Shown: positions 6,806 through 47,790 of the stretch, one piece after another
Numbering within the stretch: the stretch's first letter is position 1
Layout: every line of letters starts with the position of its first letter
Source: Guillardia theta CCMP2712
Lineage: Eukaryota > Protista > Cryptophyta
NCBI RefSeq assembly: GCF_000315625.1
Contig: NW_005434671.1
Coordinates: forward strand, 124,001-188,000
Length of the DNA: 64,000 nucleotides
Direction of reading: 5' to 3'
Translations under genes and position numbers: made by a program
Notes under the pieces: model-generated
Told to the model about the DNA's origin: nothing
What the model saw: the letters and a program-made list of their open reading frames with translations, nothing else
Database searches by the model: none

Positions 6806-7200
6806 TGACGGATCACATGGATCTTATATAGAGCCCAGACTTGCCGAGCCCAAAAACTGAGAAATTGTAACTGTTCTGGAACGGTACGGTTCTCCATTCC
6901 GACTATTCGATGGAATGACCAGAGGAAGCATCCTCGGGGCGGACAATACCCCTGGTTATCTGTATATAAGCATGGGGTCTTGTCTTCCTCTCTCTCTGTC
7001 TCTTTCCCTCTCTTCTCCCTCTTTCTTTCTCCTCATTCTCTCTCTCTTCTCTTTTCCTTTCTCACTATCTCTTAATCTTTTTCTTTCTCCTATCCTTTCA
7101 GTCTCTGTTGTCTTCCTATCCTTGCTCTACTTATAAATACTCTTATCTCTGAAGTCAATTACCTATCTGCTCTAACTTCGCTACTGCATACAATCCATCG
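6806..7200 (+). repeat. 5' LTR (TG...CG)
   Basis: Matches 12790-13184 by eye at all but the first and last base; TATA-like TATATAAG at 6963; long CT-rich tract; imperfect terminal IR TGACGGAT/ATCCATC(A). Confidence 0.95.
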
Positions 7201-7213
7201 GTTATGATAGCCT
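7200..7213 (+). promoter_or_regulatory. Primer-binding site, half-tRNA-iMet type
   Basis: GGTTATGA(TA)GCC resembles the complement of the initiator tRNA anticodon arm used by copia/Ty5; contains the gag ATG at 7204. Confidence 0.65.
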
Positions 7214-10200
7214 CGTTCTCTACTACGCCAGGGCTGACTTCTTTCTCCAATACAGCCACACTCAGTCTTGGAATTCTTGTGCTTTGGTTCGCTTACTGCA
7301 CTTTTCGACTCATCTGTTCAATCTACACAACATTGTCTGACTGGAAAGGCCGAATCTACAACAATGTATGCTTTCCATCACTACTGAACCTGTTCAACAG
7401 AAACAAACTGGCAGACCTGACAACCGACGCACAGGCTAATCTTCAATACGCCAGCACACCGCATGTGCATCGATATGTCACCAAATCCCCCAATGTTGCT
7501 CCTAACATTCTGTTTGCACATGATACCCCAACTACTTCTGGGGCAACCAAATATTCTTCTAAGGTTCTTCGACGAACAACACCAGTTTATCGTCCGAACC
7601 CAATGAGTGTGACAACTGTGAAATCTCCCACCAGTACCCCGGCACAAGTTACGATTATTTCCTCGCCATCCGGCATAGAGTTTCCACCGCTTCCACGTAG
7701 CACTGACTATGACGCACTGGACACTTGGAAACAAGGGGTAGAGAGAATCTTCCGACGTCATTCCATCCCAATGTCCGACTGGCTTCCCATCCTAGCGGAC
7801 GATCCTCGCACTGATGAACGACTGGTAAGTATCATTCGCAATGTGCAATTTGACGTAGGACCTGGAGCTTCACCCTCACAGTACTGGGAAGGTGTTATCT
7901 CTAGAGTTTTTCGTTGCACTAAATGCCCACGACCATGGGACCGGTTCTCAACACTACAGAAGAACCTTATTACGCTGAAACAGAGCAGCTCTCTTGAGCT
8001 ATACCTACTTGAGTTTGAGAATCGCTGGCGAGAACTCGCAGTATGGGCATGTGACTTTAATCTAGAAGATGGACTACCAACCCAGGATAACTTGATTACT
8101 CTACTCATTCAAGGACTGGACTCGAGATGTAGTTCAGCAGTGGCTGGCAGAACTGATGAGATTGTGAATGCCGAGACACTCACTGATGCAATGGATTTGA
8201 TTGCAGACATCTGTTCTGAATACAAGGTGGCTGGACTTGATGAGGAATCGTTCGCTCGGCTGAATAATCGTACCAAACGGACATACGGTCAGGGACTCAG
8301 GAGTGACAACATGCTTCGGGTCGAGACACCAACCGTAAGAACACCCAGCTGCATTCCCCAATCTCTCGCTTGTTACTCACGGCTCACAAAACTGTCTGCA
8401 GATACTCGAAGACTAAGTCACCACTCGCCTCAAGGGTCATGGAAGTCGAGGATCGGAATACTTCCTCTGCCACCGAACTACAGGAAACTACGTTCGCAGT
8501 ATTTTCCCCTACAAAATTTATCGTACCATCGTGCTAATAATACAACGACCCTAGCGTCTTCACGACTCGGATTGAAATCATGGCGAATTACTCAGAGGAA
8601 CTCGATTGCCCTGAAAACTACTGTCAGCCCCCTGAAAGACAAGGAGCATCATCCTCTTTCAAGGCAGACGGCTACACCTCTCGCTCCAACCACTGGGCAA
8701 CTTCCAGCGGAGACTGTGATGAACCTGGCAGAACACTATGTCAGTCCACCCAGTTCTTCAGATGAAACCCCTGAGCAACCAGGAATTCAAATTGTGTTGG
8801 ATACGGGAGCCTCCGATCATTTCTTCAACTCTGACATTCTTAATTTCATCACTGAACTTAATTCTGAACCTCTGGAGTTGCAAGTGAATACCATTCTTGG
8901 CAGTACACAAAACCAGACTGTGCTCCCAACTCGTAGACAGAGAGCTGACATATTCTCTGTCACAGCAAGGCTTCCTTTTCTTCCTGAGTCAGATCTATCA
9001 GGATTTTTCTCGCCAGACTTCATGGTGAATCTACTTTCAGCCGCCCGACTAGTGGAAAGTGGTTACTTTGTTATTCTCTGTAAAAACCATTCGGTCGTGT
9101 GCTGTCCTATAGAAAGTACCGGATCAGATGGCTCTATCCTGGTAATTCCTCTTCTCCGTTCTGGCAATACCTGGATCTTCAACTCTAGTCACCAGACAAG
9201 GTACTTAATTCGTACATCCTTACTGAACAAATTCTTGCTGTGGCTGTTGAATCCACATACCTCAGAAGTGCCAGACATCGCAGAGGCAGCCTATGTGGAC
9301 TCAAATAAGAATAAGAATGTGACAGATCAATTGTATCCTCCATTTGCACAGTTCTGCTGCAGCACGCCTACGCTCAACAGAGAATACAAGGAAACTGAAA
9401 GATCTGCGACCAGCTCAGCTCCTGAGGGATTGCCTACTGCTTCCCCTGCCGTACCGATTGGCAACACTGACACAGCTAGTAACCATCACAGTACTGAACA
9501 ATCTCTGTCTCAAAAGGCACAGTTTCTCCAGAAGTTACATCTTAAACTGGGACATGCGAACATGGTTGCCCTCACCAAACTACACTACAGCACGGCTGAA
9601 GTTCCGGAGGTACCGCGGAAGTATCTCTGCCTGGATGAAAAATGCCTGTGCTGCCTTAGAATGAAGAGCAAACAGATCCTGGCAAGTAAGCACAACGGTG
9701 AAATAACCAAATTGTGTGCGACACAGAGAAACTTTCAACCACTAGAGAAGTTACACGCTGATCTAGCAGGTCCACTGAACATTCGGACTCACAAAGGAGC
9801 AAGGCACTTTCTCGTAATCACTGACCAGGCGACACGCTTCCGATGGGTTCTACTAGTTCCCAAAAAGGATGATGTACCTGAACTCCTTCAAAGCTTCTTT
9901 CGAGACCTGCTTGCAGAATTTGGCACTAACGTAAAAATACTGATCCTACAAACCGACTGTGGCAGCGAATTTAAGAATCAGAAACTCAACACCATTCTGC
10001 AAAATGCTGGAATCAGACCTGAATACTCTTGTCCTTACACTCCAAGTCAGAATGGTATTGCAGAATCTTCGGTCAAGAGAATCAAAGAGATCACTCGAGC
10101 ATTCATGGACACATCCAATTTACCCCAGAGCCTCTGGGGGTTTGCAGCGGTACACGCTGCACGTGTTGCAAATCTCATTCCTCATCGGTTACTAAACTAT

Positions 10201-11817
10201 CAGACTCCGTTTCAATTACTGTACGGATATTACCCATCACTCAACAAGCTTCCGGTGTTCGGATGCTATGCTTGTGTTCACAGGAAAAATAACAAAGGTT
10301 CACTGGTTGGAAGCACTGTTGAAGGAATCTATCTCGGAGATGCTGATCCACTGTTTAATACAAAGGGTTATCTCGTGTATGGACCAAAGTCAAAACGATT
10401 CTTCATCTCCACGTCTGTGGCGTTTGATGAAAGCTTATACCCTTGCAGGCCAAAGAGCTCACGAAGGTTGACAGATCTCAAGGACATAAGTACACTACTT
10501 ACCGACAATGAACTTGAGTACCCTGACTACTCCAGCTCTGATCTATCAGAACACCACCAAGTCATGAGCTGTGAGCAACAATCTGGCAGTACTGATTGCT
10601 GTACAGATCTGATGAATCACGAATCTCCGAAATCTGTTCCCGGCAATGTGCATAAAGCAAAAGATACAGAACCACTGATCAAACAACGACATAGTTTGAA
10701 AACTCTGAGCAGAAAACAACTGGTCAATGCACTTGTCAGAAATAAGGTTCAACTCGAATTACCATCATACTTCTATCCGGATGAGACACCTGGAACATGG
10801 ACAGTCATGAGCCACAGAAGGGAACAAAGGAATAAGCAGACCTACCTTCTCACCAAAGTAGTGGACTGTCCTGTACCAGATGACATTGGAAAGATAATTC
10901 CACTGAAAACTGACAATTCTGAGTTCTCCTTACAGAAAGTGTTGGACCTTCAATTTAACTTTCCTCAGTATCTAGATGACATACTCTCTGTACAGCAGGG
11001 GCGTACAAGTCCAGAAGAATCAGTGAACCCCACATCTACTGCCTACTTCACCTCATCAACTCTCACTTACTGGCAGCGGATCAAGGAACCCAAAAGCATA
11101 AAGGAAGCATACGAAAGCGAACATAGAGACAAATGGATGAAAGCACTCCAAGATGAAATGACTAGCCTTGAACAAAAATTGGTGTATACTACTGAGTCAC
11201 AGGTTCCTCCCGGAACAAAAACTATCCCTTGCAAACCAGTTTTCAAGGTAAAAACAAATTCAGATGGAACCCTAGACAAATTCAAGGCTCGTATAGTAGC
11301 GTTGGGATATCGTCAAGTGAAGGGTATCGACTATGAAGAGACATTTGCACCATTTGTAGACCTGAGCACTATTCGATTGCTATTTGCATTGGCCGTAGAA
11401 TACACCTATCACATTCACCATGTCGACGTAAAAACTGCCTTCCTAAATGCAAACATAGACAAGGAAATTTATACCAGACCTCCCAAGGACTTATTGAAGT
11501 ACTTACGTGCATGGCTCACAGGAAGTGTCCCAATAGACCTACCAGAGGACGACAGAGTATTCTGGAAACTGCAGCGAGCACTATATGGTACCAAACAAGC
11601 CCCTAACTTGTGGAGTGTAACCTTACGAAATTACTTGTTACAATTAGGATTTCGTGACGTCGGATTTGAAAAATCTGTATACATTCGCAGAAAACCAGAT
11701 GGGGGTGTTCTAATCGTACTTGTCTGGGTGGATGATGTGTTACTGTTTGGAGACACCTTGGAACCTATCAATGAATTCAAGACAGAATTGAATAACAGGG
11801 TTCCCAATCACCGATAA
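7204..11817 (+). CDS. Copia gag-pol polyprotein (gag, aspartic protease, integrase, RT N-terminal part)
   Basis: VLDTGASDHF protease; HLKLGH...CLCC zinc finger; HADLAGP / TDCGSEF / QNGIAE DDE triad; TKGY; KARIVALG, DVKTAFLN, LYGTKQAP and WVDD RT motifs. Confidence 0.95.
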   Translation: MIASFSTTPGLTSFSNTATLSLGILVLWFAYCTFRLICSIYTTLSDWKGRIYNNVCFPSLLNLFNRNKLADLTTDAQANLQYASTPHVHRYVTKSPNVAPNILFAHDTPTTSGATKYSSKVLRRTTPVYRPNPMSVTTVKSPTSTPAQVTIISSPSGIEFPPLPRSTDYDALDTWKQGVERIFRRHSIPMSDWLPILADDPRTDERLVSIIRNVQFDVGPGASPSQYWEGVISRVFRCTKCPRPWDRFSTLQKNLITLKQSSSLELYLLEFENRWRELAVWACDFNLEDGLPTQDNLITLLIQGLDSRCSSAVAGRTDEIVNAETLTDAMDLIADICSEYKVAGLDEESFARLNNRTKRTYGQGLRSDNMLRVETPTVRTPSCIPQSLACYSRLTKLSADTRRLSHHSPQGSWKSRIGILPLPPNYRKLRSQYFPLQNLSYHRANNTTTLASSRLGLKSWRITQRNSIALKTTVSPLKDKEHHPLSRQTATPLAPTTGQLPAETVMNLAEHYVSPPSSSDETPEQPGIQIVLDTGASDHFFNSDILNFITELNSEPLELQVNTILGSTQNQTVLPTRRQRADIFSVTARLPFLPESDLSGFFSPDFMVNLLSAARLVESGYFVILCKNHSVVCCPIESTGSDGSILVIPLLRSGNTWIFNSSHQTRYLIRTSLLNKFLLWLLNPHTSEVPDIAEAAYVDSNKNKNVTDQLYPPFAQFCCSTPTLNREYKETERSATSSAPEGLPTASPAVPIGNTDTASNHHSTEQSLSQKAQFLQKLHLKLGHANMVALTKLHYSTAEVPEVPRKYLCLDEKCLCCLRMKSKQILASKHNGEITKLCATQRNFQPLEKLHADLAGPLNIRTHKGARHFLVITDQATRFRWVLLVPKKDDVPELLQSFFRDLLAEFGTNVKILILQTDCGSEFKNQKLNTILQNAGIRPEYSCPYTPSQNGIAESSVKRIKEITRAFMDTSNLPQSLWGFAAVHAARVANLIPHRLLNYQTPFQLLYGYYPSLNKLPVFGCYACVHRKNNKGSLVGSTVEGIYLGDADPLFNTKGYLVYGPKSKRFFISTSVAFDESLYPCRPKSSRRLTDLKDISTLLTDNELEYPDYSSSDLSEHHQVMSCEQQSGSTDCCTDLMNHESPKSVPGNVHKAKDTEPLIKQRHSLKTLSRKQLVNALVRNKVQLELPSYFYPDETPGTWTVMSHRREQRNKQTYLLTKVVDCPVPDDIGKIIPLKTDNSEFSLQKVLDLQFNFPQYLDDILSVQQGRTSPEESVNPTSTAYFTSSTLTYWQRIKEPKSIKEAYESEHRDKWMKALQDEMTSLEQKLVYTTESQVPPGTKTIPCKPVFKVKTNSDGTLDKFKARIVALGYRQVKGIDYEETFAPFVDLSTIRLLFALAVEYTYHIHHVDVKTAFLNANIDKEIYTRPPKDLLKYLRAWLTGSVPIDLPEDDRVFWKLQRALYGTKQAPNLWSVTLRNYLLQLGFRDVGFEKSVYIRRKPDGGVLIVLVWVDDVLLFGDTLEPINEFKTELNNRVPNHR

Positions 11818-12760
11818 GGGAGAAGTGGAATACTTCTTAGGGGTAGAGATCAAACGAGATCTTGAAACAGGAAGCATCACACTCTCTCAAGAAAAATTCA
11901 TCAACGAAATATTGACAGAATTCGAGATAGATGAGAAAATGAAAGCCTGGACTCCTGGAACTACAACCAAACAAAAACTTAGTGATGATGGAGATTACCT
12001 TCACAAAGGAGACCAGACGAGATATCAACAACTGATAGGCAAACTCAATTATCTCTCGGTGTTTACAAGACCTGACTTGGCCTACACAATCTCAAGACTC
12101 TCACAACATCTGAGAGCACCCACTGTAACAAATTGGAAGGAAGCTATGAGAGTTCTTCATTATCTAAATCAGACAAAAAATATGGGAATAATTTTCAAAC
12201 GGGCCGGAAGTCTACACTCACCATGTCCTGGATTAATTGCATACAGCGATAGCGATTTTGGAGGAGACTCCTCAGATCGTCGCTCAACCATTGGCTTACT
12301 TCTGCAATACAATGGTGCCCCGATAGTCTGGAAGGCTAAGAAACTCAAACTTGTCACCCTTAGTACAGCCGAATCAGAGTATTGTGCAGGCGCAAAGGCT
12401 GGAGTAGAAATCATCTACATACGACAAATATTAGAGGACCTGGGTCTAGAGTGTATCAATCCAACTCCATTGTACATTGACAATCAGGCTGCAATCTGCA
12501 TTGCAAAGAATCCAGGAAAAAAGAGTTTGGCTAAACACATTGACATCAAGAGGTTTTTCCTAAGACAACTTGTGGAAGAGAATACCGTTAACGTACAATA
12601 TGTACAGACCTCGAAGATGTTGGCTGACCTCATGACAAAATCACTTGGACGCTATCAACACATGAATCTGACTAAGCAGGTATTGGGCCAATTTGAGTCT
12701 TTCCAACATCCATCCCTTGATCCAATCTCAGAACTAAAACCTACAGACTCACCTGACTAG
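11801..12760 (+). CDS. Copia pol C-terminal part (RT thumb and RNase H), separated by a +1 frameshift
   Basis: FPITDKGEVEYFLGVEI, TRPDL, YSDSDF, STAESEY, IDNQAA, KHIDIK, ADLMTK motifs. Confidence 0.93.
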   Translation, partial: FPITDKGEVEYFLGVEIKRDLETGSITLSQEKFINEILTEFEIDEKMKAWTPGTTTKQKLSDDGDYLHKGDQTRYQQLIGKLNYLSVFTRPDLAYTISRLSQHLRAPTVTNWKEAMRVLHYLNQTKNMGIIFKRAGSLHSPCPGLIAYSDSDFGGDSSDRRSTIGLLLQYNGAPIVWKAKKLKLVTLSTAESEYCAGAKAGVEIIYIRQILEDLGLECINPTPLYIDNQAAICIAKNPGKKSLAKHIDIKRFFLRQLVEENTVNVQYVQTSKMLADLMTKSLGRYQHMNLTKQVLGQFESFQHPSLDPISELKPTDSPD

Positions 12761-12782
12761 GGACTCTACCATGTCTGGTCTC

Positions 12783-12789
12783 AGGGGGG
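12783..12789 (+). promoter_or_regulatory. Polypurine tract
   Basis: AGGGGGG immediately 5' of the 3' LTR. Confidence 0.8.
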
Positions 12790-13184
12790 CGACGGATCAC
12801 ATGGATCTTATATAGAGCCCAGACTTGCCGAGCCCAAAAACTGAGAAATTGTAACTGTTCTGGAACGGTACGGTTCTCCATTCCGACTATTCGATGGAAT
12901 GACCAGAGGAAGCATCCTCGGGGCGGACAATACCCCTGGTTATCTGTATATAAGCATGGGGTCTTGTCTTCCTCTCTCTCTGTCTCTTTCCCTCTCTTCT
13001 CCCTCTTTCTTTCTCCTCATTCTCTCTCTCTTCTCTTTTCCTTTCTCACTATCTCTTAATCTTTTTCTTTCTCCTATCCTTTCAGTCTCTGTTGTCTTCC
13101 TATCCTTGCTCTACTTATAAATACTCTTATCTCTGAAGTCAATTACCTATCTGCTCTAACTTCGCTACTGCATACAATCCATCA
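12790..13184 (+). repeat. 3' LTR (CG...CA)
   Basis: Copy of 6806-7200 at offset 5984, followed by TSD GTCTC. Confidence 0.95.
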
Positions 13185-14092
13185 GTCTCAGTCTTACTCC
13201 CTGAGGCTCCGGCGGTCGAAGTGCACTGTGAGACACTGTCATCTTGCGAGGCCGAGCCGCGCCCGCTGAGGTTCTCGTCCGATCACTGGCCCTTCGACGG
13301 TGAGCCGAGGGCTGCTCTGTGAGGCTTTCAGTGTGACTCAAAGTTAAGTTAAAAATCAGTACGAAGTAGTGCCACGGTGATTTGAGTACTACTGTGGGAC
13401 CGTGTAAAAAATTGCGACTAATAAAAATAGAACGGCCGCTCAACGGTTCTTGTAGACTCTCTGAGGCAGGGCTCTAAAGAGTTCGGCATTACTACAGGCC
13501 GAGTAAACAACTGTGCCAGGCGGACCCTGCTCAGTGCATGGAGGGAAATGGGCAGTGGGGGTGGGGGTGGGGTGAGGGGTCCGTTGGGCTTCTCGGAGGT
13601 GCCGACGGTGTGGCCCCCGGCAGGGGTAGGGTGGTTAATGTATGGAACTTGGGGTCCACTGTGCTTCTAACCTGGGGGTACTCCGTCAGTATGGCGAGGT
13701 CGGTGGCGTCCCCTTGCAGTTGAAGGGGAAGAGAAGAGAGGGTGAGAAGGGAGGTGAGAGAAGAGGGAGGAAAGGAGAGACAGAACACGATTGCATGGAT
13801 CGCTGACATTGGTTCCCTGTGCTGCATACGGCGACGCGTTCAAAGGGTACAAGAATGAAACCTGAAAAGGTCAACTGCCCAGTATTCCATCCAATGTCTC
13901 TTGGGATAAACAGCCTGTGAGAACAACGAAATGAGCTGGAGTGAATGGTGACACGATCGAACTCTGAGGAGATCAATATTGGATTGGACGCACTTTCAAA
14001 GCCAGAATGAAATCAACGCTCATATGATCAAGTTGTTTCGAGTTCGTGCATCAGTGTTGTAATCCAGGGATAATCAGGGTCATCTCATCAAC

Positions 14093-35346: not shown

Positions 35347-36348
35347 ATGAAGCATCCTGTGTGCAAGACCTACGAAGAAGCCATGGAGGTGGTGAGATCA
35401 ACCGAGCATGAAGTGCTTGAGATGCACTCGCACTGTCTGTTTACTCTCAACAACATGACGTCTCTGTGCAATCGGCTGAAAACCAACAGGAACCTTGTCA
35501 TCCTTATCCTTGGAGGTCTCGGACTGGGAAGCTCAGCAGGAAAGGAACTCGGAGTAGCGCTGCGGACGCATCCTGTACTGCAAGAGCTGCACCTGCACAA
35601 CAACAAGCTCGGCTACGAGGGGGTTCAACTCTTGTCCGAAGCGCTCATCAGCAGCAAGGAGGTGAACGAGGCTCCCAACAGGCTGCTCAAGGTGCTTGTC
35701 CTCCGCAACAACGACATAGGAAGGCACTGCAGCAGCATGTGCAATCTCTGTCGCTTCGCTCCTGATTTCCCTTGCGCGCTCCTGCAAGTGACATGTCTGC
35801 AAGTGATCGACCTCAACGCCAACAGGATAGAAGTTCTCCCCCTCCAGCTGTCCCTCATGCCTAACGTGAGATGCTCCTGCCCCTTCAACTGCTCCTTCTT
35901 TCTCTAACTCTCAGCTCTCAGCTCCTTGCTCTCGATGTCCGAGGAAATCCTATCGCCAACGTTCCCATGGATGTGATGTTAACAGCAAGGAAAGGTGTGC
36001 ACCCTCTCCTCCTGTTCCGATGGCATGGCGAGTCAACATGACAAGGTGACAAGTGCTGGCAGGGCATCAGGCGGGTTGGCCGAGCTTGAAAGAGTGGATG
36101 AAGGAGGAGCTGCAGAAAGAAGCCTCGTCCTCTTCACCAGCAGGGTCGATCTTGAGCATGGACTACTAGAAGGCACTAACAGAGAAGTTTTGCCTCACAA
36201 CTCCGAACAAGTATTTTATGGGGTACAGAAAGATGACAGAAGGTTTACAGAGCTGAAGAAGTCAAAACCGATGGATGGAGAGCACGGACGTATACGAGGA
36301 CGAGTCATGAAGCAGGGATACAAGAGATACGAAGCGACGAGAGTGTAA
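35347..36348 (+). CDS. Leucine-rich-repeat protein (RNI-like)
   Basis: LQELHLHNNKLG, LKVLVLRNNDIG, LQVIDLNANRI. Confidence 0.75.
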
Positions 36349-36427: not shown

Positions 36428-36631
36428 ATGGCTCCCCTCCCTCCTCCTCGCTCTACCATCAAGATCGCACACGTGTCAGATTGGCTTCCCTCCTCACAGC
36501 TTCCGATCCTGTGCTCGTCGACTAGGCCAGGACCCAAGAACGGAGAAGCTCTGCTTCAAAGTGTGATGGCCGCGAGACGAAAAGCGACAAGGATCGGAGA
36601 GATGCCAGGAGATCAGAAGACGTCAGGATGA
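36428..36631 (+). CDS. Microprotein family copy 1 (67 aa)
   Basis: MAPLPPPRSTIKIAHVSDW...NGEALLQSVMAA; CGCACC-ATG context; paralogous to 39991 and 41210. Confidence 0.7.
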   Translation: MAPLPPPRSTIKIAHVSDWLPSSQLPILCSSTRPGPKNGEALLQSVMAARRKATRIGEMPGDQKTSG

Positions 36632-37537
36632 GCTTTCTCGATCGAACACAATTGAAGCGGAATGTGTGTAAATATTTTTCTTGTGTAAAGTACAGGGATG
36701 CAATAAACGAGTCTAGCATTTAGTGAAAGATAGGATATCCGCACGTATCGAGTCTTGGGTGAGCCTCCCAAGCTTGTACGAAATTTCTTTATGTTTACCA
36801 TCTCGGACGACATCGAGACGGAGGACAGATCAGCAGATTAGATGCTCCAAGGCATTGAGATCAGCGCGCACAGCAGCATGGCTCATGACGTGCAAACATC
36901 TTTCGATCAAGCAAGGTACATCAATGAGTGTTGTCAGGCCGCTGTGACGTCACGGGTTCATGGGAACTTGATGATCGAAGAGTGTGCTGAACCTGCAGGA
37001 AGCAAGTCGCTCTCGGGTGAACTTGGAAGCTGCGTTTGCTTCGCCGTCACGGGCTGAACTCGTGCGGTGAAGGAGGGAGAGGAAGTGATAGAGGAGGAGG
37101 AAGAGGGAAACTGAAAATGACAATCAGCCGCTAGCTAGTCAAATCCGTCTTGACCGCCCCCTTGAACTTGGAAGGAAAGTTTCAAAGTTTGAATCGAACA
37201 ACTTCAGCAACAAACTTTTGAGCAAACCTGTGACTCGAAGTTTCTTCGGTTGAAATGAGCCGTTGCTTTGAAAGTCATGGATTGTGGCCTAAATTTGTAT
37301 TTAAAAATTGAATTTCAAAAGTAGAAAAACTTTTCCTGGAAAATTTGTACACAATCCCCCGAATAGTTGCCAAAAGTACCAAATCATCGCTGACCGGAAC
37401 CGCGACCGGTAAATTCGTTCCAACGGCCAAAATCTGGCGTTGACAAGAGTGAAGTGAAGAAGCGACGAGCAACGAGCAAGGAGATCAGGCACGTGGGTCA
37501 GAAGATCAAGCTCAAGTTAGACCATCAGCAGCGATTC

Positions 37538-39654
37538 ATGTCTCGTACAGAAGTTCAGATCCCTAAGCTCCCGGGGTTTGGATTCTCCCATGTAAGTGCT
37601 CGTTGATCCTTGTCCTCACTTCCACTAATAATTTGCTGCAGCATGTTGGCAAAAGCGACTTCCGCAAGGCATCTCGTTTCGGATACAAGGATGGTCAGTG
37701 CATTTACACTCCGCGCGAGGAGCAAGAGCAAGCCAAGTTACTTGGCGATCGACCACTGACCAACACCCGACACCCTTTCGAAATGTCCTCGTCTGAGTGG
37801 ATGGCTAGCAAGAATCCTTTGCAATCAGAAAGTTCCTTCACCCCCAGATATGCTCTTCTCGACAAGAAGGTGCTGCGCTACTATGGTGTTTATGTGGATA
37901 CCGTTGATCCCTCTGTCATCGGAAGTGCTCCGCTTGATGCCCAGGTGAGAGACAACAACTTTGTGCATGAGTGCACCATTCTCTACTACCTCGAAGATGG
38001 CACCATGCAAGTCGGCGAGAAGAGGCAAGACAACAGCGGTATGATGCAGGGTCAAGTGGTGAAAAGAACGCACGTTCCCAAGCCCATTTACAATGAGGAA
38101 GGATGGATTCTTCCGAATCCCAATGAGGCTCCTAACGGCACAGCGAGCTTGCTCAACGATTCATCTTCAAGCCTGTCCTCGTTCTACACTCCTGATGACT
38201 TTGAGATTGGAGGAGAAATCAACATCTTTGGGAGGTTGTTCTACATCTTCGATTGTGATCAGTTCACCAGAGATTATCACGATCAAGTCTTGGGCCGCCC
38301 CATCGAACCGGCCGTAATCCATACAGCAAGGCAGAATGCCCCCAAGGACAAGTACATAGCGCATGTTACTAGGCAGAAGACGGCAAAGATGGAGCTCGCT
38401 CACCGTCATACAGCCTTTGCAGCCAGTGGAATCATCAAGGAGGAGGATCATGGGGCTTATCTCAAGTTCTTGCAGTGGGATACCAAGGTGCTCAGATTTT
38501 ATTGCGTGTGGGATGACAGACAGACCATGTACGGCGACCAAAGGAAGTTTGTGATTCGTTACTACTTAGCGAACGACACGATGGACATGGTGGAAGACAA
38601 AGTCGCCAACAGCGGGAGGGTGACGGGCAACTTCCTCAAGCGAGGCCGAGTGCCCAAGAAAACGCCAGCAAGCATTGTGGGGACGGGAGATGTCCACACG
38701 GGCGACTACTATACACCAGCTGACCTGATGGTGGGAGATACCATCACCATCTACAACAGGTCTGCAGCAGGAGGTGGTGCTGCTCTAGTGCTGATTGTGA
38801 TACGTAATTTGCAGGATCTTCTTCATCTATGGCTGTGATGAGTTCACAAGGAGATATTACGCACAAAACTTTGGGATTTCAGACATGCCCGAGTATGACG
38901 TCGAGCACGAGCAGCAGCCTCAGGCCATCGTTAGAGCGCCAGTTCCTCCATACACAGGTCCTCTCGTCCTGATGCTTCTTGTTGTCTCATGAAGTAGCTT
39001 GTAGGGTTTGGAACGCAGGAAGACTCTTTCGGCTCTGTTCTCTACCTGGTACCAAAACCGCCGCACAAGTCGTTCCAGAAGATGTTGGATGTAACATCGC
39101 TGTCATGTGAAACGAGCTGAGCTAATCAAGCATGTCAGAATGAGAAGAAGCGATTGAGGTTTCGAGCGAGGTTGGCAAAGCCCAAGGACTCGCTGGACGA
39201 GCAGAGGAGGTTTATCATCACCTACTTCATGGTGCAGACTCGTGCATGACTGGAGGGAGTCTGATAATCGATTCCAGGGGGATGATTCCATCTCTGTCTA
39301 TGAGGAGACGATCAACAACAGCGGGAGGGTAGGAGGTAAGAAAGACCTCTCCTGTTCTCTCGTCTTCTGCAACCAACTCATCTACATCCACTACAGGCAA
39401 GTTCCTTGAGAGAAGCAAGATAGCCAAGCCTGATCCCGAGCTCGGCTCATCCAACCTGGAATACTACGAGATTCAGGTTCCTGTCACGGCAGAGCTTGTA
39501 TGATTTCTTTGTCTCAACTCGTCGGCAGGACATGATTATCGACACCGTCGTGACCTTTAACTGCCATGAGTTCTACCTGATGGAGATTGACGAGTACAGC
39601 CGCAAGATCTTGTTGAAAATGTTTCCGGGGCGAGAGGACTTGGTGAAGAAGTAG
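37538..39654 (+). CDS. EFHC/RIB72-family DM10-domain axonemal protein
   Basis: N-terminal IPKLPGFGF; three DM10 domains (KVLRYY...YYLEDGTM, KVLRFY...YYLANDTM, RLRFRARL...RRFIITYF); no C-terminal EF-hands seen. Confidence 0.92.
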
Positions 39655-39990
39655 ATCATGGCTTAACAAGACTGACTCACGATGAATGAAATGTGCACTC
39701 CGAATCCCTGAAACTTGGATTGCCCAATCATGATAACTGAAGGTTCCAAGTTTTTTCCAAGAGTATGCCACTCATGACGTTTTTCACCGTGTCACTGAGC
39801 CCCGGGCCGCACCGGCCGGCCCGGTCGGACTGAAGAGTCTTTAAGAAGCCGCAACTAAGGCTCATGCCGAAAAAGGCAAACCTTTAAAATATTTTTTGAT
39901 TAAAATGATTTTAGATATCTCCCTGGATCGAGCAAAGATGCTCGCGCTGCTTGAGGGACTGACTCTTGCGACCCCCCCGCTCCTGCCGCC

Positions 39991-40203
39991 ATGTCGCCTC
40001 TCCCTCCTCCTGGCTTCACCATCAAGATCGCTCATGTCTCCACCTGGTCTCTTCCTTCGTCTACTCCCAGCTCAAATTCGTGGACCAGGCCTGAGTCGAG
40101 AAACGACGTTCTGCTTCAGAATGTGATGATAGCTAGGAGGATGACAATGTCAAGCCTGGAAGGAATCAGCGTAGACGGTGTAAATCAGATCGAGGTAATA
40201 TGA
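39991..40203 (+). CDS. Microprotein family copy 2 (70 aa)
   Basis: MSPLPPPGFTIKIAHVSTW...NDVLLQNVMIA; GCCGCC-ATG context. Confidence 0.7.
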   Translation: MSPLPPPGFTIKIAHVSTWSLPSSTPSSNSWTRPESRNDVLLQNVMIARRMTMSSLEGISVDGVNQIEVI

Positions 40204-41209
40204 TGATCATGATGATGATGAACCAGGTGGGGTGTAAATTGCTAAAGAAAGTACTTCTTGTCCAGACCATGTGTATATAAATAGAGTTCTCCTGAGAACG
40301 ATGTGTGATGTGCGCGACCAAAGAAGAAAATCATTTGCTTGACAACGCGACAATAATGATCAGATGCGGCAATGCATGATCAAACGATGTCGTCGGCGGC
40401 GGAAGCAGCAGCAGCCATCCCATCCCAATCATCTCCTGAAAGGCGAGCATCCTGCTGTGGCGAAGAAAATCAAGGTTTTCCTCCAACAAGATCAAGCTCC
40501 TAGCACGAGCTCCAGGTCCGTCGTCGTCATAAATGTAATTAACATTACCACCATCACCACCATCACCATCATCACCACCATCGTCTTCAACACCCCCTCT
40601 TAGCCACCACCATCAATGACAACTACAGCAGACGCAGAAGCAGCAACAAGATCAAGCAAGCAACGTGAACAAAAACAACAATGACGGAAGAAGGGAGGAG
40701 GCACGAACGACGAGATGATGATGAGATAGATAAAAAATAGGAAGTGCTGTGATAGTTGCCAGCTTTTGCTGTTCTTGTATCATCATTGAATATAGATGAC
40801 GATTCATCATTGTAACATTGATCACAGCTGAACAAAGATCGTGCAACTGATAAAACTCCCGACAGAGAAAGACATTCTGTACCATTCATGGAATTTGTCA
40901 CTGTCTCCATTCTCATCTCGGTTCACGATCAAGGGCGAGCGATCTGAATGTCGGAACGAGGAGGAGGCGACCGCGACAAGGCGGGGGTGGTCACAAGAAA
41001 AAAAAAAGAACAAAAGCTGAAAGAAAGAATATCCTTCGTTTGCAAGCGCTGCAGTTTTCGAGCGTTTGGTATCTCAGGAGTCATTGTTCTCGCGGAAGCT
41101 CATGAGTCAGATGTTTAACCCTTGCAACAAGTCGGGGCTCGGGGTGCGCATCTTTTACAAGTGCTTTATTGTTGTCCTTGTGTGTGCCCTTGGCTGCTCG
41201 CCGGCCGCC

Positions 41210-41404
41210 ATGTCGCCTCTCCCTCCTCCTCGCCTCACCATCAAGATCGCTCATGTCTCCGAATGGTCGCCTGCTTCATCACTCACGACCAAGTCTGCAT
41301 TCCACAACGGGGGAGCTCTGCTTTGGAACGTCATGGAGGCGACGAACAAGATGCAACAGAAATGTAGAATTGCAGCACAAGAGAGAAAGACAACGGCGCG
41401 ATGA
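41210..41404 (+). CDS. Microprotein family copy 3 (64 aa)
   Basis: MSPLPPPRLTIKIAHVSEW...NGGALLWNVMEA; GCCGCC-ATG context; internal Met of ORF 41066-41404. Confidence 0.7.
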   Translation: MSPLPPPRLTIKIAHVSEWSPASSLTTKSAFHNGGALLWNVMEATNKMQQKCRIAAQERKTTAR

Positions 41405-41541
41405 AGAACGACAGGACAGGGCTTACATGAGGTAGAAGAGGTGTGAGTTAAGCTCGGTGTACAGTAGAACAATCATAATAACAATACATAGTCGACATGC
41501 TACATCTGAGGTGCATCTATTTGCCTGGTCCACGGATCCAA

Positions 41542-44343
41542 CTAGCTCTGATTGCTGCTAGAAGGAGTCCTGCTGGGCACGATCATCTTAGATCCCAGCA
41601 GCGGAGTCAAGAGCTACGATCCGATCAGTCCCCATGACATGTTTGTGCGAGGCTTGTTACCTGTACGACGCTGTTCACAGCATCATAGAACACCTCGCGC
41701 GGTTGGATGGAGTCCGACGAAGTGTCATATACCAGCTGCTCCATGGTAACAAAGTCTGGGTCGTCCTCTGTAAATCGTGTCAGCCCCAAGACTCCCTCGC
41801 GACTTCCTTTCACTGCTTCAACCCCTAAATTGATCAAGTGTAGCTTCGACTGAACTTAACCCCCTTCTACCATCATTCCCTCTCTTGTCATAGAATCTTC
41901 AGCATCCTGGCTATACTTACCCGAAGGCAGCTTGGCGACTGCTGGCACGACGGGCAACCAGGCGGTGAAGACCGACGAGCTCTCATAGTCTCTCGTCTCG
42001 TCCATGTAGATCCAAACGAGCTTCTTGCCCAGCTCAAGGGCGACTAGAACCTCCGCTCGTAGATGAGGAGATGCTTCAACTTGCGCAGAGATGAGGCACA
42101 AGACAGCCTTTGCTCGGCAAACTCCTCGCGCAAGGTTGCAGGCCCCATCTTGAAACGTGGTGATGACCCGCAAGCCTCTTGTGTGCACACATGTCAAGAA
42201 GAGCGATACTGCCGCTGATAGTCTGTCACCTGCTCTCTAGCTCCACTCTCAGGAAGCTAGCGATCTTGTCGTGCGGACTTTGAACCGAGATCATTACGTC
42301 CTGTCAGCACTCAACACGGGAATGAAGAGCCAGTAACAAGTCACGATTCGATTCTCTTCTAATGAATCCATCGGATTGAGATCCTTCAAACACGAAATTC
42401 AGCCATCTTGCAACAGAAATGACTCACCAACATATTGTGGAGGAAACCCAAGAGCCCACAAAGCTGCTTCTGCTGCACAGCGAGCGACGTTGCTGCTGCT
42501 GTTTTTGAATACCTGAAAGTACTCTATGGTCAAACATTCACCATCAACCAAACGTCTCATCCAAGAGAGTTGTCAAGAACAAGCAGGCATCGTCAAGTTC
42601 GAGTGTGTGCCTACATTTGTGAGAATCGAGAGAATTTCGGATGTCTCTTCGATCACTCTGGCCTGAATCTTCTTGTTCTGTGCAAATCGAAGCAGCGATG
42701 TGCAACTAATCTCTTCTGCAACCGGATTCCTGTGCCGGCCGTCAAAGATAATGAGTAGCTCAAAATCACAAAATGTCTGATCATGTGCAAGCTCCACTCT
42801 GCATAGGTATATTCATGCATACAGCGAGATCAACTCACACAACTTTCTGCTTGAGGACCTGAGACATTGGTTACAATACTTCTGGTAGTTTAAAGAATCT
42901 CGGTGACCTTGACAAACAACGATGGGCAACCAAGTTCCAGTAGTTGCGCGTGCTGATCTTCATGTATGCAAAAGTTGCTGACAGACATACAAACTTTCCA
43001 TATCGTCCCATATCTCCCTCCGAACATCTAAATCGCCGAAACTCAACATAAGGAGCAAGCGGCACGAGATGATTGGTGAGAAAGAAGCAAGAGAGGTAGC
43101 ACCTTACGGTTGAGAACCGCTTTCAGGGCTGAAATGCATTTCACAACTATCTGATGCTCGTCATTCAGAATCTGAATCAAGTTCCTTCAGTTCTTCGCTC
43201 AAGGATCGATGAGTATCAGTAAAGCATATACCGGAAATTCTTGAATCGGCAAGCCCCCGGCTATGTTTGCAACTGCAAGGACTGCACTCATGCTGTTGAG
43301 CTCGATCTTGTCTTTGAGGACGATCGGACTGAGAGTCTCGACAACTCCATCCTGAAACAAAAGAGGCCTGCTGGCTGGCCTGTAGCTCAAGCTGCAAACA
43401 AAACCCACGGCTGCACTGACGACAAAATGTGGAGTATCTTCGTGTGATATCAAGTGTTTTGCTTTATCAAGGATGTTGTCCTTTAAGATGATGTCATGAA
43501 CATCCCATGAGCTGTTTGCTGTGTTGTTGAGGACATGGAAAATGCATTCACGAACTCTCCATGATATTCTTTTCTCGCTCAGCAACCCAGCAAGAATGCT
43601 TGGCAGAGATTTCCTCGAGTTGAGAATGGTCAAGTTTTCCTTCATCACCTGCACTCTTGCTTTGAGCTCGTTGCTTTTGGTCGCGTCAGCTGAGATAGCT
43701 TCTTCTTTCAACTGGTTGATGACGGTTTCTTCATCTTTTGCCATACTGCGAGCTTCTGACTTCCAGTTCCCAATGATGGTTTCAGCAACACGTGAATTAT
43801 CATAACTCAACTGCACAAGAGTTCTGAGACATCGCCAAACAAGAACTTCAGGTGTGTCTGATGCTGAGATCAGATCAACGAGAACTCCAGAAACATGCGG
43901 AAACTTTCCATATTCGCATACCAACGCCTGCCTCCGATTCTCAACGCTCTTGTTTTCATGTTCAGATAATCTCCAGCATTGAATGGCTGCTTCACATTTC
44001 GATTCAAGAGGAGCTCGTTTGCTCGTCAATGTTTCAAAACTATCCTCCAGGAACGAAAAAAATTCCGCATTCTCGACCTCAGACTCGAAGACAGCTTTAG
44101 AGACTACTGACATGACAAGTGTGACTTTTGTTGTCTCTTTGCAAAGATCTGCTCATTCCTTTCCAACTGCCATGACGGATCGTGAGAAGATTTGATCTAA
44201 GAAGCAACATCACAACACGGCATCAATCCCCTCCATTTCCTCTTCGCATGCAAAACTCAATCTTCTAAGAGATTTTTGACGTACATCTCGCTCGTCACAA
44301 CTCCACTATCTTCCATCTTCTGCATCTTGTCGACCCTGTTCAT
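41542..44343 (-). CDS. Armadillo-repeat protein with C-terminal TIR domain
   Basis: ARM-like helices in 43199-44113; spliced 3' exons read DVMISVQSPHDKIASFLRVELESRGLRV...KAVLCLISAQVEASPHLRAEVLVALELGKKLVWI (TIR_2 pattern). Confidence 0.7.
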
Positions 44344-45983: not shown

Positions 45984-47790
45984 TTAGGCTCCAACATGAG
46001 CCACACAAGTGGTAACAAGTTGCCCGTTGCGGATACGAGTCTCGTACTGTAAATCAATCAGTCCATCTGTCGTCCGAGGAATGAAACGTCAAACCTGCTC
46101 TGGGATTGGCAGCTCAGTTGGATCCTCCGCGTCGCTCTAGAGGAGAGTCAGCTGGAGGTGAGATGCAGAGAATACCTGAACCTTAGCTGGAAGGACGATG
46201 TTCAACTCAGAGCACTTGGAGGTTACAATCGCCACATCTTCGTCGACGCATCTCTGCGAGAGATACACGATGACGCCAGCGCAGCCGTCGATGGTGATCA
46301 TCGGGGTCCAGTCAAGGATCTGCCAGGAGCACTGAGCAACGGGCCTGCACTCTTGCAGGAGAAACCTGAATCTCACACGACTTGCAGTTGATCACGTCTA
46401 CTGAAGCCACGCACGAATCGACTACCATCGAAGTCTTCGTGCAGCCGTCCATCTGAACCGTGTTGATTTTGCCAGGGATCTAATTCCAGTCAGATCCCGC
46501 ATGCCATACCAGACTTGCATTGAACCTGGAGCAGCGATCCTTTGCATTGCGCCATACAGACAGAGGTCTTGGTGCTTGCATCATCAATCTTGAGGTCTCG
46601 ATTGTTCTCCATGTTCTCGATGAACCACTTGGCTCCATTCTTCTCCATCTTGGGAGGCTTCTTGGCAGGTTCGGCGCGGGATCTTGCAGGTCAAGACCGC
46701 TGTCAGACCGTTCGTGTCACTCCTCCCTTATGCTTACATGGTAGAGGAAGACTTCTCCTTGTCTGCTACCACAGATGAAGCGCGCAGGGCAGGATTCTTG
46801 TGAGTCATCTGATCTTTGCTCACCTACATAAGTTATATGATAACAATCAGTACACCCTGAAGACAACAGCCGAAATACCTTCTTCAAGCCTTTGGTCACG
46901 CCGCCTTCGCCTTTTGCGTTAATTTCGGCAAACAGAGCAGCATGGGCCGAGGGTCCCGAGCTTGCAGGCTTGGCGACATCATCGAAGAATCCTGCAGGAG
47001 GAGGGGGAGGAGGAGGAGGAGGACCTCCAGCAGGGGGAGGGGGAGGAGCACCGGAGGCTGTAGACGCGGCTTTTGCAGGTTCGCTACCCGCGGTGTAGTC
47101 TGGTAGCATCAAGGTTACATTCACGACGATCAAGACAATCAGCCGACCTGTTCCTCCTCTTGGATTCCAAGCGACGCCAGTTGTGTGATGTGCTTTCACG
47201 TACTTCTGGAGCTCGAGCAAGAACTGCTTGAAAGACTTGGCGAAGTTAACATGGTTCTCGTCCTTTCCTCGAAACTCCATCATGATCTTGTTGCCATACA
47301 TCTCGCTTGCGGGAATGACGTCACCCAAATAAGGAGCAGGAAGATCGATAGCAATCCATCCGAGGCATGCTGCACCCTCCGCAACCATGGCAAGATGGTT
47401 GAATCTGCTGCTCCTCCTGTCCTTGAGCGAGTCAACCTTTGACATGGCTTCAGAAACCGGAGCGAGAACTTTCTGCATGTCATTCGCATTGGGTTTCACA
47501 CACTTGCTTGCGATGACAAGAAACTTCCTCTGCTCGTTGATAGCTCCTCGGAAGGCAGTGATGACCCCTTCAACGTCTTTCTCAAAGGATTTCGCCGCAG
47601 TCTCAATGGGAGCAAAGTGCGTGTGGATCAATTCGTCGAATGCTTTGACAAATGGAGCATCTTCCTGAGGTGCAGCTTCCTGGCCTGCAGAAGCTCCTGG
47701 ACCTACACCGACTGAACGCATCCGTGACTCGATTGCTTCCAGCCTTGCTGCCACCGCCTCCAGACGAGAAATCGCTTCGGAACCATTCAT
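45984..47790 (-). CDS. CAP: Adenylyl cyclase-associated protein (CAP/Srv2)
   Basis: SRLEAVAARLE motif, FNHLAMVAEG, YVKAHHTTG, polyproline, WH2 ALFAEIN...TKGLKKV, C-terminal ITIDGCAG...TSKCSELN...ELPIPEQ. Confidence 0.95.

What the first reader, a model, noticed from the sequence alone, without database searches (positions are those of the whole stretch)
36428..41404. Local family of three unannotated 64-70 aa microproteins with two conserved blocks
Seen: three intronless plus-strand ORFs (36428-36631, 39991-40203, 41210-41404) share M[AS]PLPPPxxTIKIAHVSxW and NxxxLLx[NS]VMxA, with a variable linker and tail. Each has a Kozak-like start (CGCACC or GCCGCC-ATG) and an AT-rich 3' flank. Several differences in the conserved block are synonymous (GCA CAC GTG TCA vs GCT CAT GTC TCC for AHVS) and the linker indel keeps frame, suggesting selection on the peptide. 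No signal peptide and no domain I recognise. Inference: a lineage-specific cytosolic peptide family, with a polyproline docking motif plus an amphipathic helix as in inhibitor or adaptor peptides. The copies flank the EFHC gene and abut the ARM-TIR gene.
Basis: partly seen in the sequence, partly recalled or inferred. Interest (0 to 1): 0.75.

Follow-up and report, generated by a model that had tools for sequence, protein, structure and literature searches.

The report
Cryptophyte-only two-motif microprotein gene family
The three small ORFs are real, unannotated members of a family of about 25 tiny, basic, mostly disordered proteins found only in the alga Guillardia theta and its sister genus Hanusia; two short peptide motifs are kept by selection, but what they bind is unknown.

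Summary
All three plus-strand ORFs (67, 70 and 64 aa) exist as described and share an N-terminal block, M-x-PLPPP-x-x-TIKIAHVS-x-W, and a second block, LL-x-[NS]-VM-x-A.

They are not only a local trio. The genome (87 Mb, Guillardia theta CCMP2712) holds at least 25 loci of this family in small clusters on nine contigs:
- 18 intact ORFs of 64-112 aa;
- one interrupted by an assembly gap;
- two distant relatives;
- four broken relics, one of them in the window at 40929-40984 on the minus strand.

Conservation is at the peptide level. In the two blocks dN/dS is 0.23 in the ORF frame and 1.3-1.9 in the shifted frames. The linker varies by in-frame indels, and the start Met stays 7-20 residues before block 1.

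An exhaustive HMM search of 1.84 billion proteins found only two G. theta hypothetical-protein clusters and two Hanusia phi proteins. One Hanusia protein has the same 78-aa length, start and stop as its G. theta counterpart.

There is no Pfam, PDB or TE link. AlphaFold predicts one helix (block 2) and an otherwise extended chain.

Best reading: complete single-exon genes for disordered, basic microproteins that dock onto an unknown partner. Function is untested, and c2 and c3 may be under relaxed constraint.

The parts
36428..36631 (+). c1: 67-aa microprotein ORF and the most canonical of the three (pI 10.4, net charge +5). Block 1 is at 36440-36484 and block 2 at 36548-36583.
   Evidence: (E = 1.2e-20 against the 16-member family model)
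36667..36707 (+). 3' flank of c1: two TGTAA motifs (36667-36671, 36684-36688) and one AATAAA (36702-36707), 36-76 nt after the stop. Candidate 3'-end processing signals.
   Evidence: TGTA is 5-fold enriched after the stops of family members, P = 5e-13
39991..40203 (+). c2: 70-aa microprotein ORF. Block 1 is at 40003-40047 and block 2 at 40108-40143. It is atypical: Gly replaces Arg8 and it is not basic (pI 6.5). A TGTAA lies at 40233-40237.
   Evidence: (E = 2.6e-20)
40929..40984 (-). Degenerate relic copy of block 1 (reads SPPPRSDIQIA). The start codon position is TTG, a TGA follows after 16 codons, and there is no block 2. It is divergent from c3, with 226 nt between the start positions.
   Evidence: (inverted repeats I1-I3)
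41210..41404 (+). c3: 64-aa microprotein ORF. Block 1 is at 41222-41266 and block 2 at 41315-41350. Block 2 is degenerate: the near-invariant Arg is Thr. A TGTAC lies at 41458-41462.
   Evidence: (E = 5.2e-18)

Best explanation
The three ORFs are complete, single-exon genes of a taxonomically restricted family of microproteins, known only from Guillardia theta and Hanusia phi. Members are 64-117 aa, mostly basic (pI 9.3-11.5) and rich in Ser, Pro and Thr.

Each protein is mainly a disordered chain carrying two conserved short linear motifs:
1. An N-terminal extended segment, P-x-x-[ST]-I-x-I-x-x-V-S-x-W. Its most conserved residues (I11, I13, S17, W19) fall on alternate positions, that is, on one face of a beta-strand.
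2. A short helix, LL-x-N-V-[ML]-x-A-R, followed by basic residues.

The linker between the motifs (15-50 aa) and the tail evolve freely.

Shown: the ORFs exist, the family exists, selection acts on the two motifs in the ORF frame, start and stop positions are conserved, and there is no known homologue.

Inferred: the proteins work as docking or regulatory peptides. Block 1 would add a strand to a folded partner and block 2 would bind as a short hydrophobic-then-basic helix, so each microprotein tethers, occludes or competes at a partner site.

The family grows and decays by local tandem and inverted duplication of gene units of about 300-480 bp (birth and death). Within this window c1 looks functional; c2 and c3 are more derived and may be under relaxed constraint.
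For: Coding and selection:
- In the two blocks, summed over five independent pairs, pS = 0.525 and pN = 0.183, giving dN/dS = 0.23. The same nucleotides read in the +1 and +2 frames give 1.33 and 1.85. Fisher p = 1e-10.
- Third codon positions vary most: 0.39 and 0.57, against 0.15 and 0.29 at second positions.
- 16 non-identical intact members keep both blocks in one open frame despite linker indels. The other five frames carry 18-55 stops over the same DNA.
- The Met lies 7-20 residues before block 1 in all intact members.

Complete genes rather than first exons:
- Three paralogues are annotated with exactly the Met-to-stop ORF, at 67 and 78 aa.
- Hanusia phi P0004 is 78 aa, 53% identical end to end to G. 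theta P0002, with the same start and stop.
- TGTA motifs are 5-fold enriched in the 130 nt after the stops: 30 observed against 5.6 expected, P = 5e-13.

Restricted range:
- An exhaustive HMM search gave only four hits, all Guillardia or Hanusia.
- Two metagenome scans found nothing.
- Pfam, PDB sequences and the ESM Atlas gave nothing.

Architecture:
- AlphaFold2 with the family alignment gives mean pLDDT 68. The only secondary structure is a helix at residues 36-56, and the block-2 decade has pLDDT 86.

Not a transposable element:
- Close paralogues share only units of about 300-480 nt.
- Neighbours are unrelated host genes and none is a TE protein.
Against:
- Whole-ORF dN/dS is 0.4-1.2, because the linker and tail are unconstrained or unalignable.
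- The blocks were chosen for their amino-acid conservation, which biases dN/dS downward. The shifted-frame control addresses this only in part.
- Between c2 and c3 the blocks give dN/dS of about 1.0, on small counts (Sd 4.2, Nd 13.8). c3 lacks the near-invariant Arg of block 2.
- No binding partner is identified, and no known motif class is met (see membership tests).
- Four relics show that copies decay.
- ACC-ATC-AAG-ATC in block 1 is almost invariant even at third positions. This could be codon bias or an added RNA- or DNA-level constraint.
- That the Hanusia phi proteins derive from a transcriptome is my own recollection and was not verified here.
Confidence: 0.6

Rival explanations
1. The ORFs are first exons, or 5' parts, of longer spliced genes. 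The conserved blocks would then be an N-terminal module and the stop codons would lie in introns.
For: G. theta nuclear genes are intron-rich (own knowledge). c2 ends in GAG|GTAATA, overlapping its stop, and c3 has GAG|GTAGAA about 25 nt after its stop. Both resemble splice donors.
Against: - There is no conserved GT at a conserved position after block 2.
- Three paralogues are annotated as exactly the Met-to-stop ORF.
- Hanusia P0004 ends at the same residue as G. theta P0002.
- All database relatives are 67-117 aa and no longer protein carries the blocks, in a search with no length limit.
- TGTA signals cluster just after the stops.
Confidence: 0.08
2. The similarity is a non-coding dispersed repeat or a transposable-element fragment. 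The ORFs would be accidental open frames in C/T-rich DNA.
For: - Copies occur in inverted pairs: window 40929-40984(-) with 41210(+), C298, C77 and C355.
- Four copies are frame-disrupted or truncated.
- Upstream leaders are C/T-rich, so long open frames are easy to get.
- ACCATCAAGATC is almost invariant at the DNA level.
Against: - The substitution pattern is frame-specific: dN/dS 0.23 in frame against 1.3-1.9 out of frame.
- 16 of 16 non-identical intact members keep both blocks in frame across variable linkers.
- The start Met and the stop position are conserved, the latter across genera.
- No TE proteins, terminal repeats or larger shared unit lie around the copies.
Confidence: 0.03
3. 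The proteins are real, but they act through charge rather than by docking onto a specific protein partner. They would be small basic, Ser/Pro-rich polypeptides that bind nucleic acid, ribosomes or chromatin, or acidic membranes, with block 2's basic helix as the contact.
For: pI is 9.3-11.5 and net charge +3 to +9 in 17 of 18 members. A basic cluster (R-R/K-K) follows the block-2 helix. The weak, non-significant PDB similarities were to ribosomal protein uS8 and others.
Against: The best-conserved residues are hydrophobic or specific (I13, S17, W19, L43, V46, A49), not the basic ones. Lys12 and the residues after Arg50 vary. c2 is not basic. Sequence-specific conservation of a 10-residue strand is not expected for purely electrostatic binding.
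Confidence: 0.15
4. Block 1 is a HORMA-domain closure motif, like the Mad2-interaction motif. The family would then be decoys or regulators that are trapped under the safety belt of a HORMA protein.
For: The published Mad2-interaction consensus is K/R-psi-psi-x-phi-x-x-x-P, with a proline of variable position (PMC4657174). The paralogues with K-I-L-[HQ]-V-S-P-W fit K-psi-psi-x-phi and have a proline two residues earlier. The motif is predicted extended, as a closure motif must be. G. theta has a HORMA gene.
Against: - In the three window copies the second psi is Ala and there is no proline.
- The Lys is not invariant, while the family's invariant residues (P7, S17, W19) are not part of the consensus.
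- The five-residue core occurs 1.84 times per 1000 aa in random six-frame translation of the window, so the match is cheap.
- No binding test was possible.
Confidence: 0.05

Closest known systems
Guillardia theta hypothetical proteins GUITHDRAFT_155960 (XP_005820641, 67 aa) and GUITHDRAFT_119972 / GUITHDRAFT_122248 (78 aa), and Hanusia phi EukProt EP00960 P056468 (78 aa) and P063790 (117 aa)
   Same: Same family: Met close to block 1, both blocks present, a Ser/Pro-rich linker, 64-117 aa, basic.
   Different: They are 24-46% identical to c1. The window copies have a shorter linker, an acidic or Thr residue instead of Pro or Ala before the Trp, and no Cys-x-Asp before block 2. All are uncharacterised, and no paper mentions them.
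Short-linear-motif microproteins that regulate a folded hub. PP1 inhibitors with RVxF and SILK motifs, and Mad2 ligands with a Mad2-interaction motif, are examples of the kind.
   Same: Small and disordered, with conservation confined to two short motifs separated by a free linker. One motif is extended and strand-like, the other helical.
   Different: No defining consensus of these classes is met (see membership tests). There is no homology and the partner is unknown.
Taxonomically restricted (orphan) multigene families of protist genomes
   Same: Restricted to two sister genera, arranged in clusters, evolving by birth and death with relics, and lacking any known domain.
   Different: There is unusually clear evidence of peptide-level constraint and of ORF boundaries conserved across genera for proteins this small.

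Membership tests
Guillardia/Hanusia two-block microprotein family (GUITHDRAFT_155960 type; uncharacterised) | Block 1, P-x-x-[ST]-[IV]-x-I-x-x-[VI]-S-x-W, within 20 residues of the start Met | tested here: met
   c1, c2 and c3 all carry it 9 residues after the Met. Family-model E-values are 1e-20 to 5e-18.
Guillardia/Hanusia two-block microprotein family (GUITHDRAFT_155960 type; uncharacterised) | Block 2, L-L-x-[NS]-V-[ML]-x-A-R, in the same frame, with the stop 10-60 codons later | tested here: met
   Present in all three. c3 has Thr in place of the near-invariant Arg.
Mad2-interaction / HORMA closure motif (K/R-psi-psi-x-phi-x-x-x-P; PMC4657174) | K/R, two aliphatic residues, x, a hydrophobic residue, then a proline | tested here: not met
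   The window copies read K-I-A-H-V-S-[DTE]-W-[SL], so the second aliphatic is Ala and there is no proline. Paralogues with K-I-L-[HQ]-V-S-P fit only in part. The core pattern is common by chance.
PP1-docking RVxF motif ([RK]-x(0,1)-[VI]-{P}-[FW]; consensus from own knowledge) | Val/Ile and Phe/Trp separated by exactly one non-Pro residue, preceded by a basic residue | tested here: not met
   Block 1 has V-S-x-W, so two residues lie between Val and Trp, and the second is often Pro in paralogues.
Class II SH3 ligand (PxxPx[KR]; consensus from own knowledge) | P-x-x-P-x-[KR], conserved across the family | tested here: not met
   c1 and c3 (PLPPPR) fit. c2 (PLPPPG) and the C77 (TLPTPR), C298 (PLPAPR) and C355 members do not. 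Only Pro7 is invariant.
WH2 actin-binding motif (Pfam PF02205) | A match to the WH2 profile (an LLxxI helix followed by LKKV) | tested here: not met
   No Pfam family matched any of the three ORFs at E up to 10. The spacing from LL to the basic pair is shorter than in WH2 (own reading).
Transposable element or non-coding dispersed repeat | A larger shared unit with termini or TE proteins, and conservation independent of reading frame | tested here: not met
   The shared unit is only about 300-480 nt. Neighbours are host genes. Conservation is frame-specific.
First exon of a longer gene, or a conserved-peptide uORF | A conserved splice donor after the conserved part, or a constant downstream main ORF | tested here: inconclusive
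   There is no conserved donor position and downstream genes differ between loci. Annotated and Hanusia relatives end at the ORF stop. No transcript data for the window loci could be consulted.

The most novel reading that the evidence does not exclude
The family is a lineage-specific set of roughly 20 decoy ligands for a conserved cell-cycle or chromosome hub. Block 1 (K-I-[LA]-[HQ]-V-S-[P/x]-W) would mimic a HORMA-domain closure motif and be captured by Mad2, Rev7 or a HORMAD, and block 2 would add a second contact. This would be an expanded family of genome-encoded microprotein regulators of a HORMA switch in an alga.
Probability: 0.05. Interest if true: 0.8.

Novelty: categorically new. 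Interest (0 to 1): 0.45.

Why it matters
Microproteins under 100 aa are routinely missed in protist annotation. Here 3 of 3 window copies, and most of the roughly 25 loci, have no gene model.

This family is a clean case where sequence alone gives strong evidence that such ORFs are real genes: frame-specific constraint, conserved ORF boundaries across two genera, and a shared 3' signal.

It belongs to no described family ('new' here means new in sequence space; no new mechanism has been demonstrated). It offers two sharply defined peptide motifs that can be synthesised and used directly to fish for partners in a model cryptophyte.

It also provides a small test set for improving small-ORF annotation, and a candidate 3'-end signal (TGTA) for G. 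theta nuclear genes.

If the partner is a conserved hub, the family would show how a lineage invents and expands motif-only regulators.

Tried and rejected
Searches that returned nothing useful:
- Pfam on the three ORFs at E up to 10 gave nothing.
- The PDB sequence search with the family profile gave only chance-level hits, E = 1-5.
- The ESM Atlas gave scores up to 0.85 to unnamed bacterial clusters, which is uninformative.
- The word-index protein search found only one paralogue and missed an exact member, so I relied on the exhaustive HMM search instead.
- Two metagenome scans, using A-type and P-type motif patterns, found no relatives. The alignment of all members was too divergent for that tool.
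- A literature search for the three annotated locus tags found no papers.
- The earlier notes of this scan for this region concern a Copia element and a Kv channel and do not bear on this finding.

The 854-nt ENA contig that carries a 107-aa call of the C298 paralogue (P0003), and any transcript-like contigs, could therefore not be inspected.

Analyses that did not settle their question:
- Whole-ORF dN/dS is not informative, because the linker is saturated or unalignable.
- The family tree is unresolved: 11 of 15 inner branches have under 80% support. Monophyly of the window trio cannot be claimed.

Readings considered and rejected:
- Cryptophyte phycoerythrin alpha-subunit: there is no signal or transit peptide and no chromophore Cys.
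- Pyrenoid Rubisco-binding motif, LC8 TQT motif, calcineurin PxIxIT, APC/C D-box and a ribbon-helix-helix fold: none fits the conserved positions. These comparisons rest on consensus patterns recalled from my own knowledge.
- c1 as the first exon of the DM10 (EFHC-like) gene: that gene's N-terminal region lies in the 37603 ORF, about 1 kb downstream. That this region resembles the EFHC N-terminus is my own comparison with the human EFHC1 sequence as I recall it.


Full report
**1. The observation**

The three plus-strand ORFs exist exactly as described: 36428-36631 (67 aa), 39991-40203 (70 aa) and 41210-41404 (64 aa). They share 22 invariant columns, concentrated in two blocks:
- Block 1, at the N-terminus: M-[AS]-PLPPP-x-x-TIKIAHVS-x-W.
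- Block 2: LL-x-[NS]-VM-x-A.

DNA similarity starts about 9 nt before the ATG (CGCACC or GCCGCC before ATG), runs through block 1, resumes at block 2 and then disappears. The flanks do not align.

It lies at 40929-40984 on the minus strand, 226 nt from c3 and pointing away from it. It reads S-PPPRSDIQIA, has TTG at the start position and a TGA 16 codons later, and has no block 2.

**2. A genome-wide family, not a local trio**

The window is C3:124001-188000 of an 87-Mb, 669-contig assembly. The only named database relatives identify it as Guillardia theta CCMP2712.

A profile of the three ORFs, and then of 16 members, finds the same two-block ORF elsewhere:

| Contig | Copies |
|---|---|
| C77 | 3 |
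| C169 | 4 |
| C74 | 2 intact + 1 relic |
| C355 | 2 |
| C298 | 1 + 1 interrupted by an assembly gap |
| C163 | 1 |
| C245 | 1 |
| C304 | 1 |
| C46 | a distant tandem pair |
| C3 (46862 and 86603) | 2 broken copies: one frameshifted between the blocks, one truncated |

Together with the window, that makes 18 intact ORFs of 64-112 aa, one gap-interrupted copy, two distant relatives and four relics.

The C298 and C163 copies are 99% identical over 480 nt, and C163's copy lies at a contig end, so they may be an assembly duplicate.

Copies often form divergent or convergent inverted pairs a few hundred bases apart. Two sequence types can be told apart:
- K-I-A-H-V-S-[A/x]-W with [AG]-x-LL before block 2. 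The window copies are of this type.
- K-I-L-[HQ]-V-S-P-W with C-x-D-LL.

Each type includes one Hanusia sequence. The tree is too poorly resolved to say more: 11 of 15 inner branches have under 80% support.

**3. Coding or repeat?**

Several independent lines point to coding.

(a) *Frame-specific constraint.* In the two blocks, over five phylogenetically independent pairs, pS = 0.525 and pN = 0.183, giving dN/dS = 0.23. The same nucleotides re-cut in the +1 and +2 frames give 1.33 and 1.85. The Fisher test of synonymous against non-synonymous changes gives p = 1e-10.
- Pairwise differences per codon position are 0.25 / 0.15 / 0.39 in block 1 and 0.30 / 0.29 / 0.57 in block 2.
- Pro, Arg, Ser, Ala, His, Val and Leu codons vary freely at third positions.
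- Caveat: the blocks were chosen for amino-acid conservation. The shifted-frame control is the safeguard.
- A residual oddity is that ACC-ATC-AAG-ATC is almost invariant at the DNA level.

(b) *Frame maintenance.* The linker differs in length by up to about 35 residues, yet both blocks stay in one open frame in all 16 non-identical intact members. The other five frames of the same DNA carry 18-55 stops in total.

(c) *Conserved ORF boundaries.* A Met lies 7-20 residues before block 1 in every intact copy. The stop follows block 2 by 10-60 codons.

(d) *Independent gene models.* Three paralogues are annotated with exactly the Met-to-stop ORF: GUITHDRAFT_155960 (67 aa), and GUITHDRAFT_119972 and _122248 (78 aa).

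(e) *Conservation in another genus.* An exhaustive HMM search of 1.84 billion cluster representatives returned only four proteins: the two G. theta clusters and two from Hanusia phi (EukProt EP00960). Hanusia phi is described as closely related to G. theta (PMC10877234).
- Hanusia P0004 is 78 aa and 53% identical end to end to G. theta P0002, which is also 78 aa. They share start, stop and even the tail pattern.
- To my knowledge the Hanusia data set is a transcriptome, which would mean these genes are expressed. I could not verify that here.

(f) *A shared 3' element.* TGTA occurs 30 times in the 130 nt after the stops of 13 members, against 5.6 expected from the window's frequency (P = 5e-13). 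It occurs only 4 times in the 130 nt upstream.
- c1 also has AATAAA 71 nt after its stop.
- I read this as a candidate 3'-end signal. That reading is untested.

(g) *No sign of a mobile element.* Close paralogues share only about 300-480 nt, essentially leader plus ORF plus a short 3' stretch. Long ORFs near the other clusters are ordinary host genes: RWP-RK, Ras, TRM1, a DEAD helicase, Myb and a 2OG-Fe(II) oxygenase. Around the window copies lie an LRR gene, a DM10 (EFHC-like) gene, an ARM-like gene and CAP. No functional theme recurs among these neighbours.

**4. Limits for the three window copies**

Their exact sequences are absent from the 15-billion-protein collection. No representative containing them appeared in the exhaustive search. 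So they are unannotated.

Block-level dN/dS is 0.13 for c1 against c2 and 0.19 for c1 against c3, but about 1.0 for c2 against c3 on few changes. c3 has lost the near-invariant Arg of block 2. c2 has Gly for Arg8 and, unlike the rest of the family, is not basic (pI 6.5). c1 is therefore the most canonical copy. c2 and c3 may be diverging under relaxed constraint, and the relic at 40929-40984 shows the end point of that process.

**5. What the protein looks like**

Members are 64-117 aa. In 17 of 18 the pI is 9.3-11.5 and the net charge +3 to +9. Ser, Pro and Thr make up 24-44% of residues.

No hydrophobic signal-peptide core is visible at the N-terminus (read directly from the sequence).

AlphaFold2 with the 16-member alignment gives mean pLDDT 68 and pTM 0.29. 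The only secondary structure is a helix at residues 36-56, covering block 2; that decade has pLDDT 86. The N-terminal 20 residues are extended, with pLDDT about 76.

In block 1 the best-conserved residues (I11, I13, S17, W19, with H/Q15) sit at alternate positions, which is one face of a strand. In block 2 they are L43, V46 and A49, followed by R50 and further basic residues. The helix is a hydrophobic patch followed by a basic cluster. It is not strongly amphipathic: the hydrophobic moment is 0.03-0.35.

**6. Mechanism**

*Shown:* two short peptide motifs are under purifying selection within otherwise free-evolving, disordered, basic microproteins.

*Inferred:* these are motif-only docking or regulatory peptides. 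Block 1 would bind by adding a strand to a folded partner, with one conserved face and an anchoring Trp. Block 2 would bind as a short helix with an adjacent basic patch. The variable linker would let the two contacts reach two sites.

I put about 0.85 on 'real translated microprotein genes' and about 0.5 on the docking-peptide mechanism. The partner is unknown.

Alternatives are listed with odds under rival explanations: charge-driven binding to nucleic acid or ribosomes, first exons of longer genes, a non-coding repeat, and a HORMA closure-motif mimic.

**7. Comparison with known motif classes**

- *Mad2-interaction motif.* The published consensus is K/R-psi-psi-x-phi-x-x-x-P (PMC4657174). 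The K-I-L-[HQ]-V-S-P-W paralogues match it only in part. The window copies do not match: they have Ala at the second aliphatic position and no proline. The five-residue core occurs 1.84 times per 1000 aa in random translation, so the resemblance is cheap. G. theta does have a HORMA gene, so this reading is not excluded, but I rate it at about 5%.
- *RVxF, class II SH3 ligand and WH2.* These patterns are not met at the family level (see membership tests). Pfam finds nothing.
- *Closest relatives.* The only real relatives are the uncharacterised Guillardia and Hanusia proteins, and no paper mentions them.

**8. Novelty and verdict**

This is a real gene family restricted to Guillardia and Hanusia, and it belongs to no described family. 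Most of its members, including all three in this window, are missing from the annotation.

I rate it 'categorically new' only in the sense of sequence space. No new mechanism has been demonstrated, and orphan families are common in protist genomes, so interest is moderate (0.45).

Its interpretation is partly supported. The parts that hold are a lineage-specific peptide family, selection on the peptide, and a helix. The parts that do not hold or remain untested are local-only distribution, a conserved polyproline ligand, strong amphipathicity, and any functional link to the EFHC and ARM neighbours.

Noticed in passing
window 6280-6306(-) and 13335-13361(-); also L024:1016-1055, L034 (four places), L032:843-877, L038:2118-2195: A 27-40 nt repeat (TACTG[CA]TTTTTAACTTAACTTTGAGTA) lies on either side of the Copia element that others noted at 6801-13189. 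It recurs within 1-2 kb of family clusters on C169, C304, C245 and C355. Chance expectation in the window is 0.
   Followed up: partly
130 nt downstream of the stop codons of family members (for example window 36667-36688, 40233-40237, 41458-41462): TGTA motifs (TGTAA, TGTAG, TGTAC) are 5-fold enriched after the stops: 30 observed against 5.6 expected. This is a candidate 3'-end or polyadenylation signal of G. theta nuclear genes.
   Followed up: partly
window 40534-40594: A tandem array with a 9-nt period (CATCACCAC and variants, 5 or more units) lies in the spacer between c2 and c3.
   Followed up: no
G000:C3:46702-46930(-) and C3:86594-86671(-), 77 kb and 37 kb before the window start: Two broken copies of the 78-aa subfamily lie on the same contig as the window. 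One has a frameshift between the blocks and the other is truncated after block 1. Beyond the copies, their flanks are 87-98% identical to each other over about 1 kb, which suggests a segmental duplication.
   Followed up: partly
G000:C46:377936-378094(+) and 379346-379504(+) (L047, L049): A tandem pair of ORFs of about 120 aa carries a clear block 2 (ELLQGVLEARK) and a much-diverged block 1 (PPTFSIALVS, with no Trp). These are probably distant members of the family.
   Followed up: partly
window 37603-39654(+), 35347-36348(+), 41856-44113(-), 46717-47790(-): The neighbouring genes are a DM10-domain (EFHC/Rib72-like) gene, an LRR gene that ends 80 nt before c1, an ARM-like gene convergent with c3, and a cyclase-associated protein (CAP) gene.
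   Followed up: partly
block 1 codons 10-13 in all members (window 36455-36466, 40018-40029, 41237-41248): ACC-ATC-AAG-ATC is almost invariant at third positions across the family, although neighbouring codons vary freely. This may be codon bias or an additional RNA- or DNA-level constraint.
   Followed up: no
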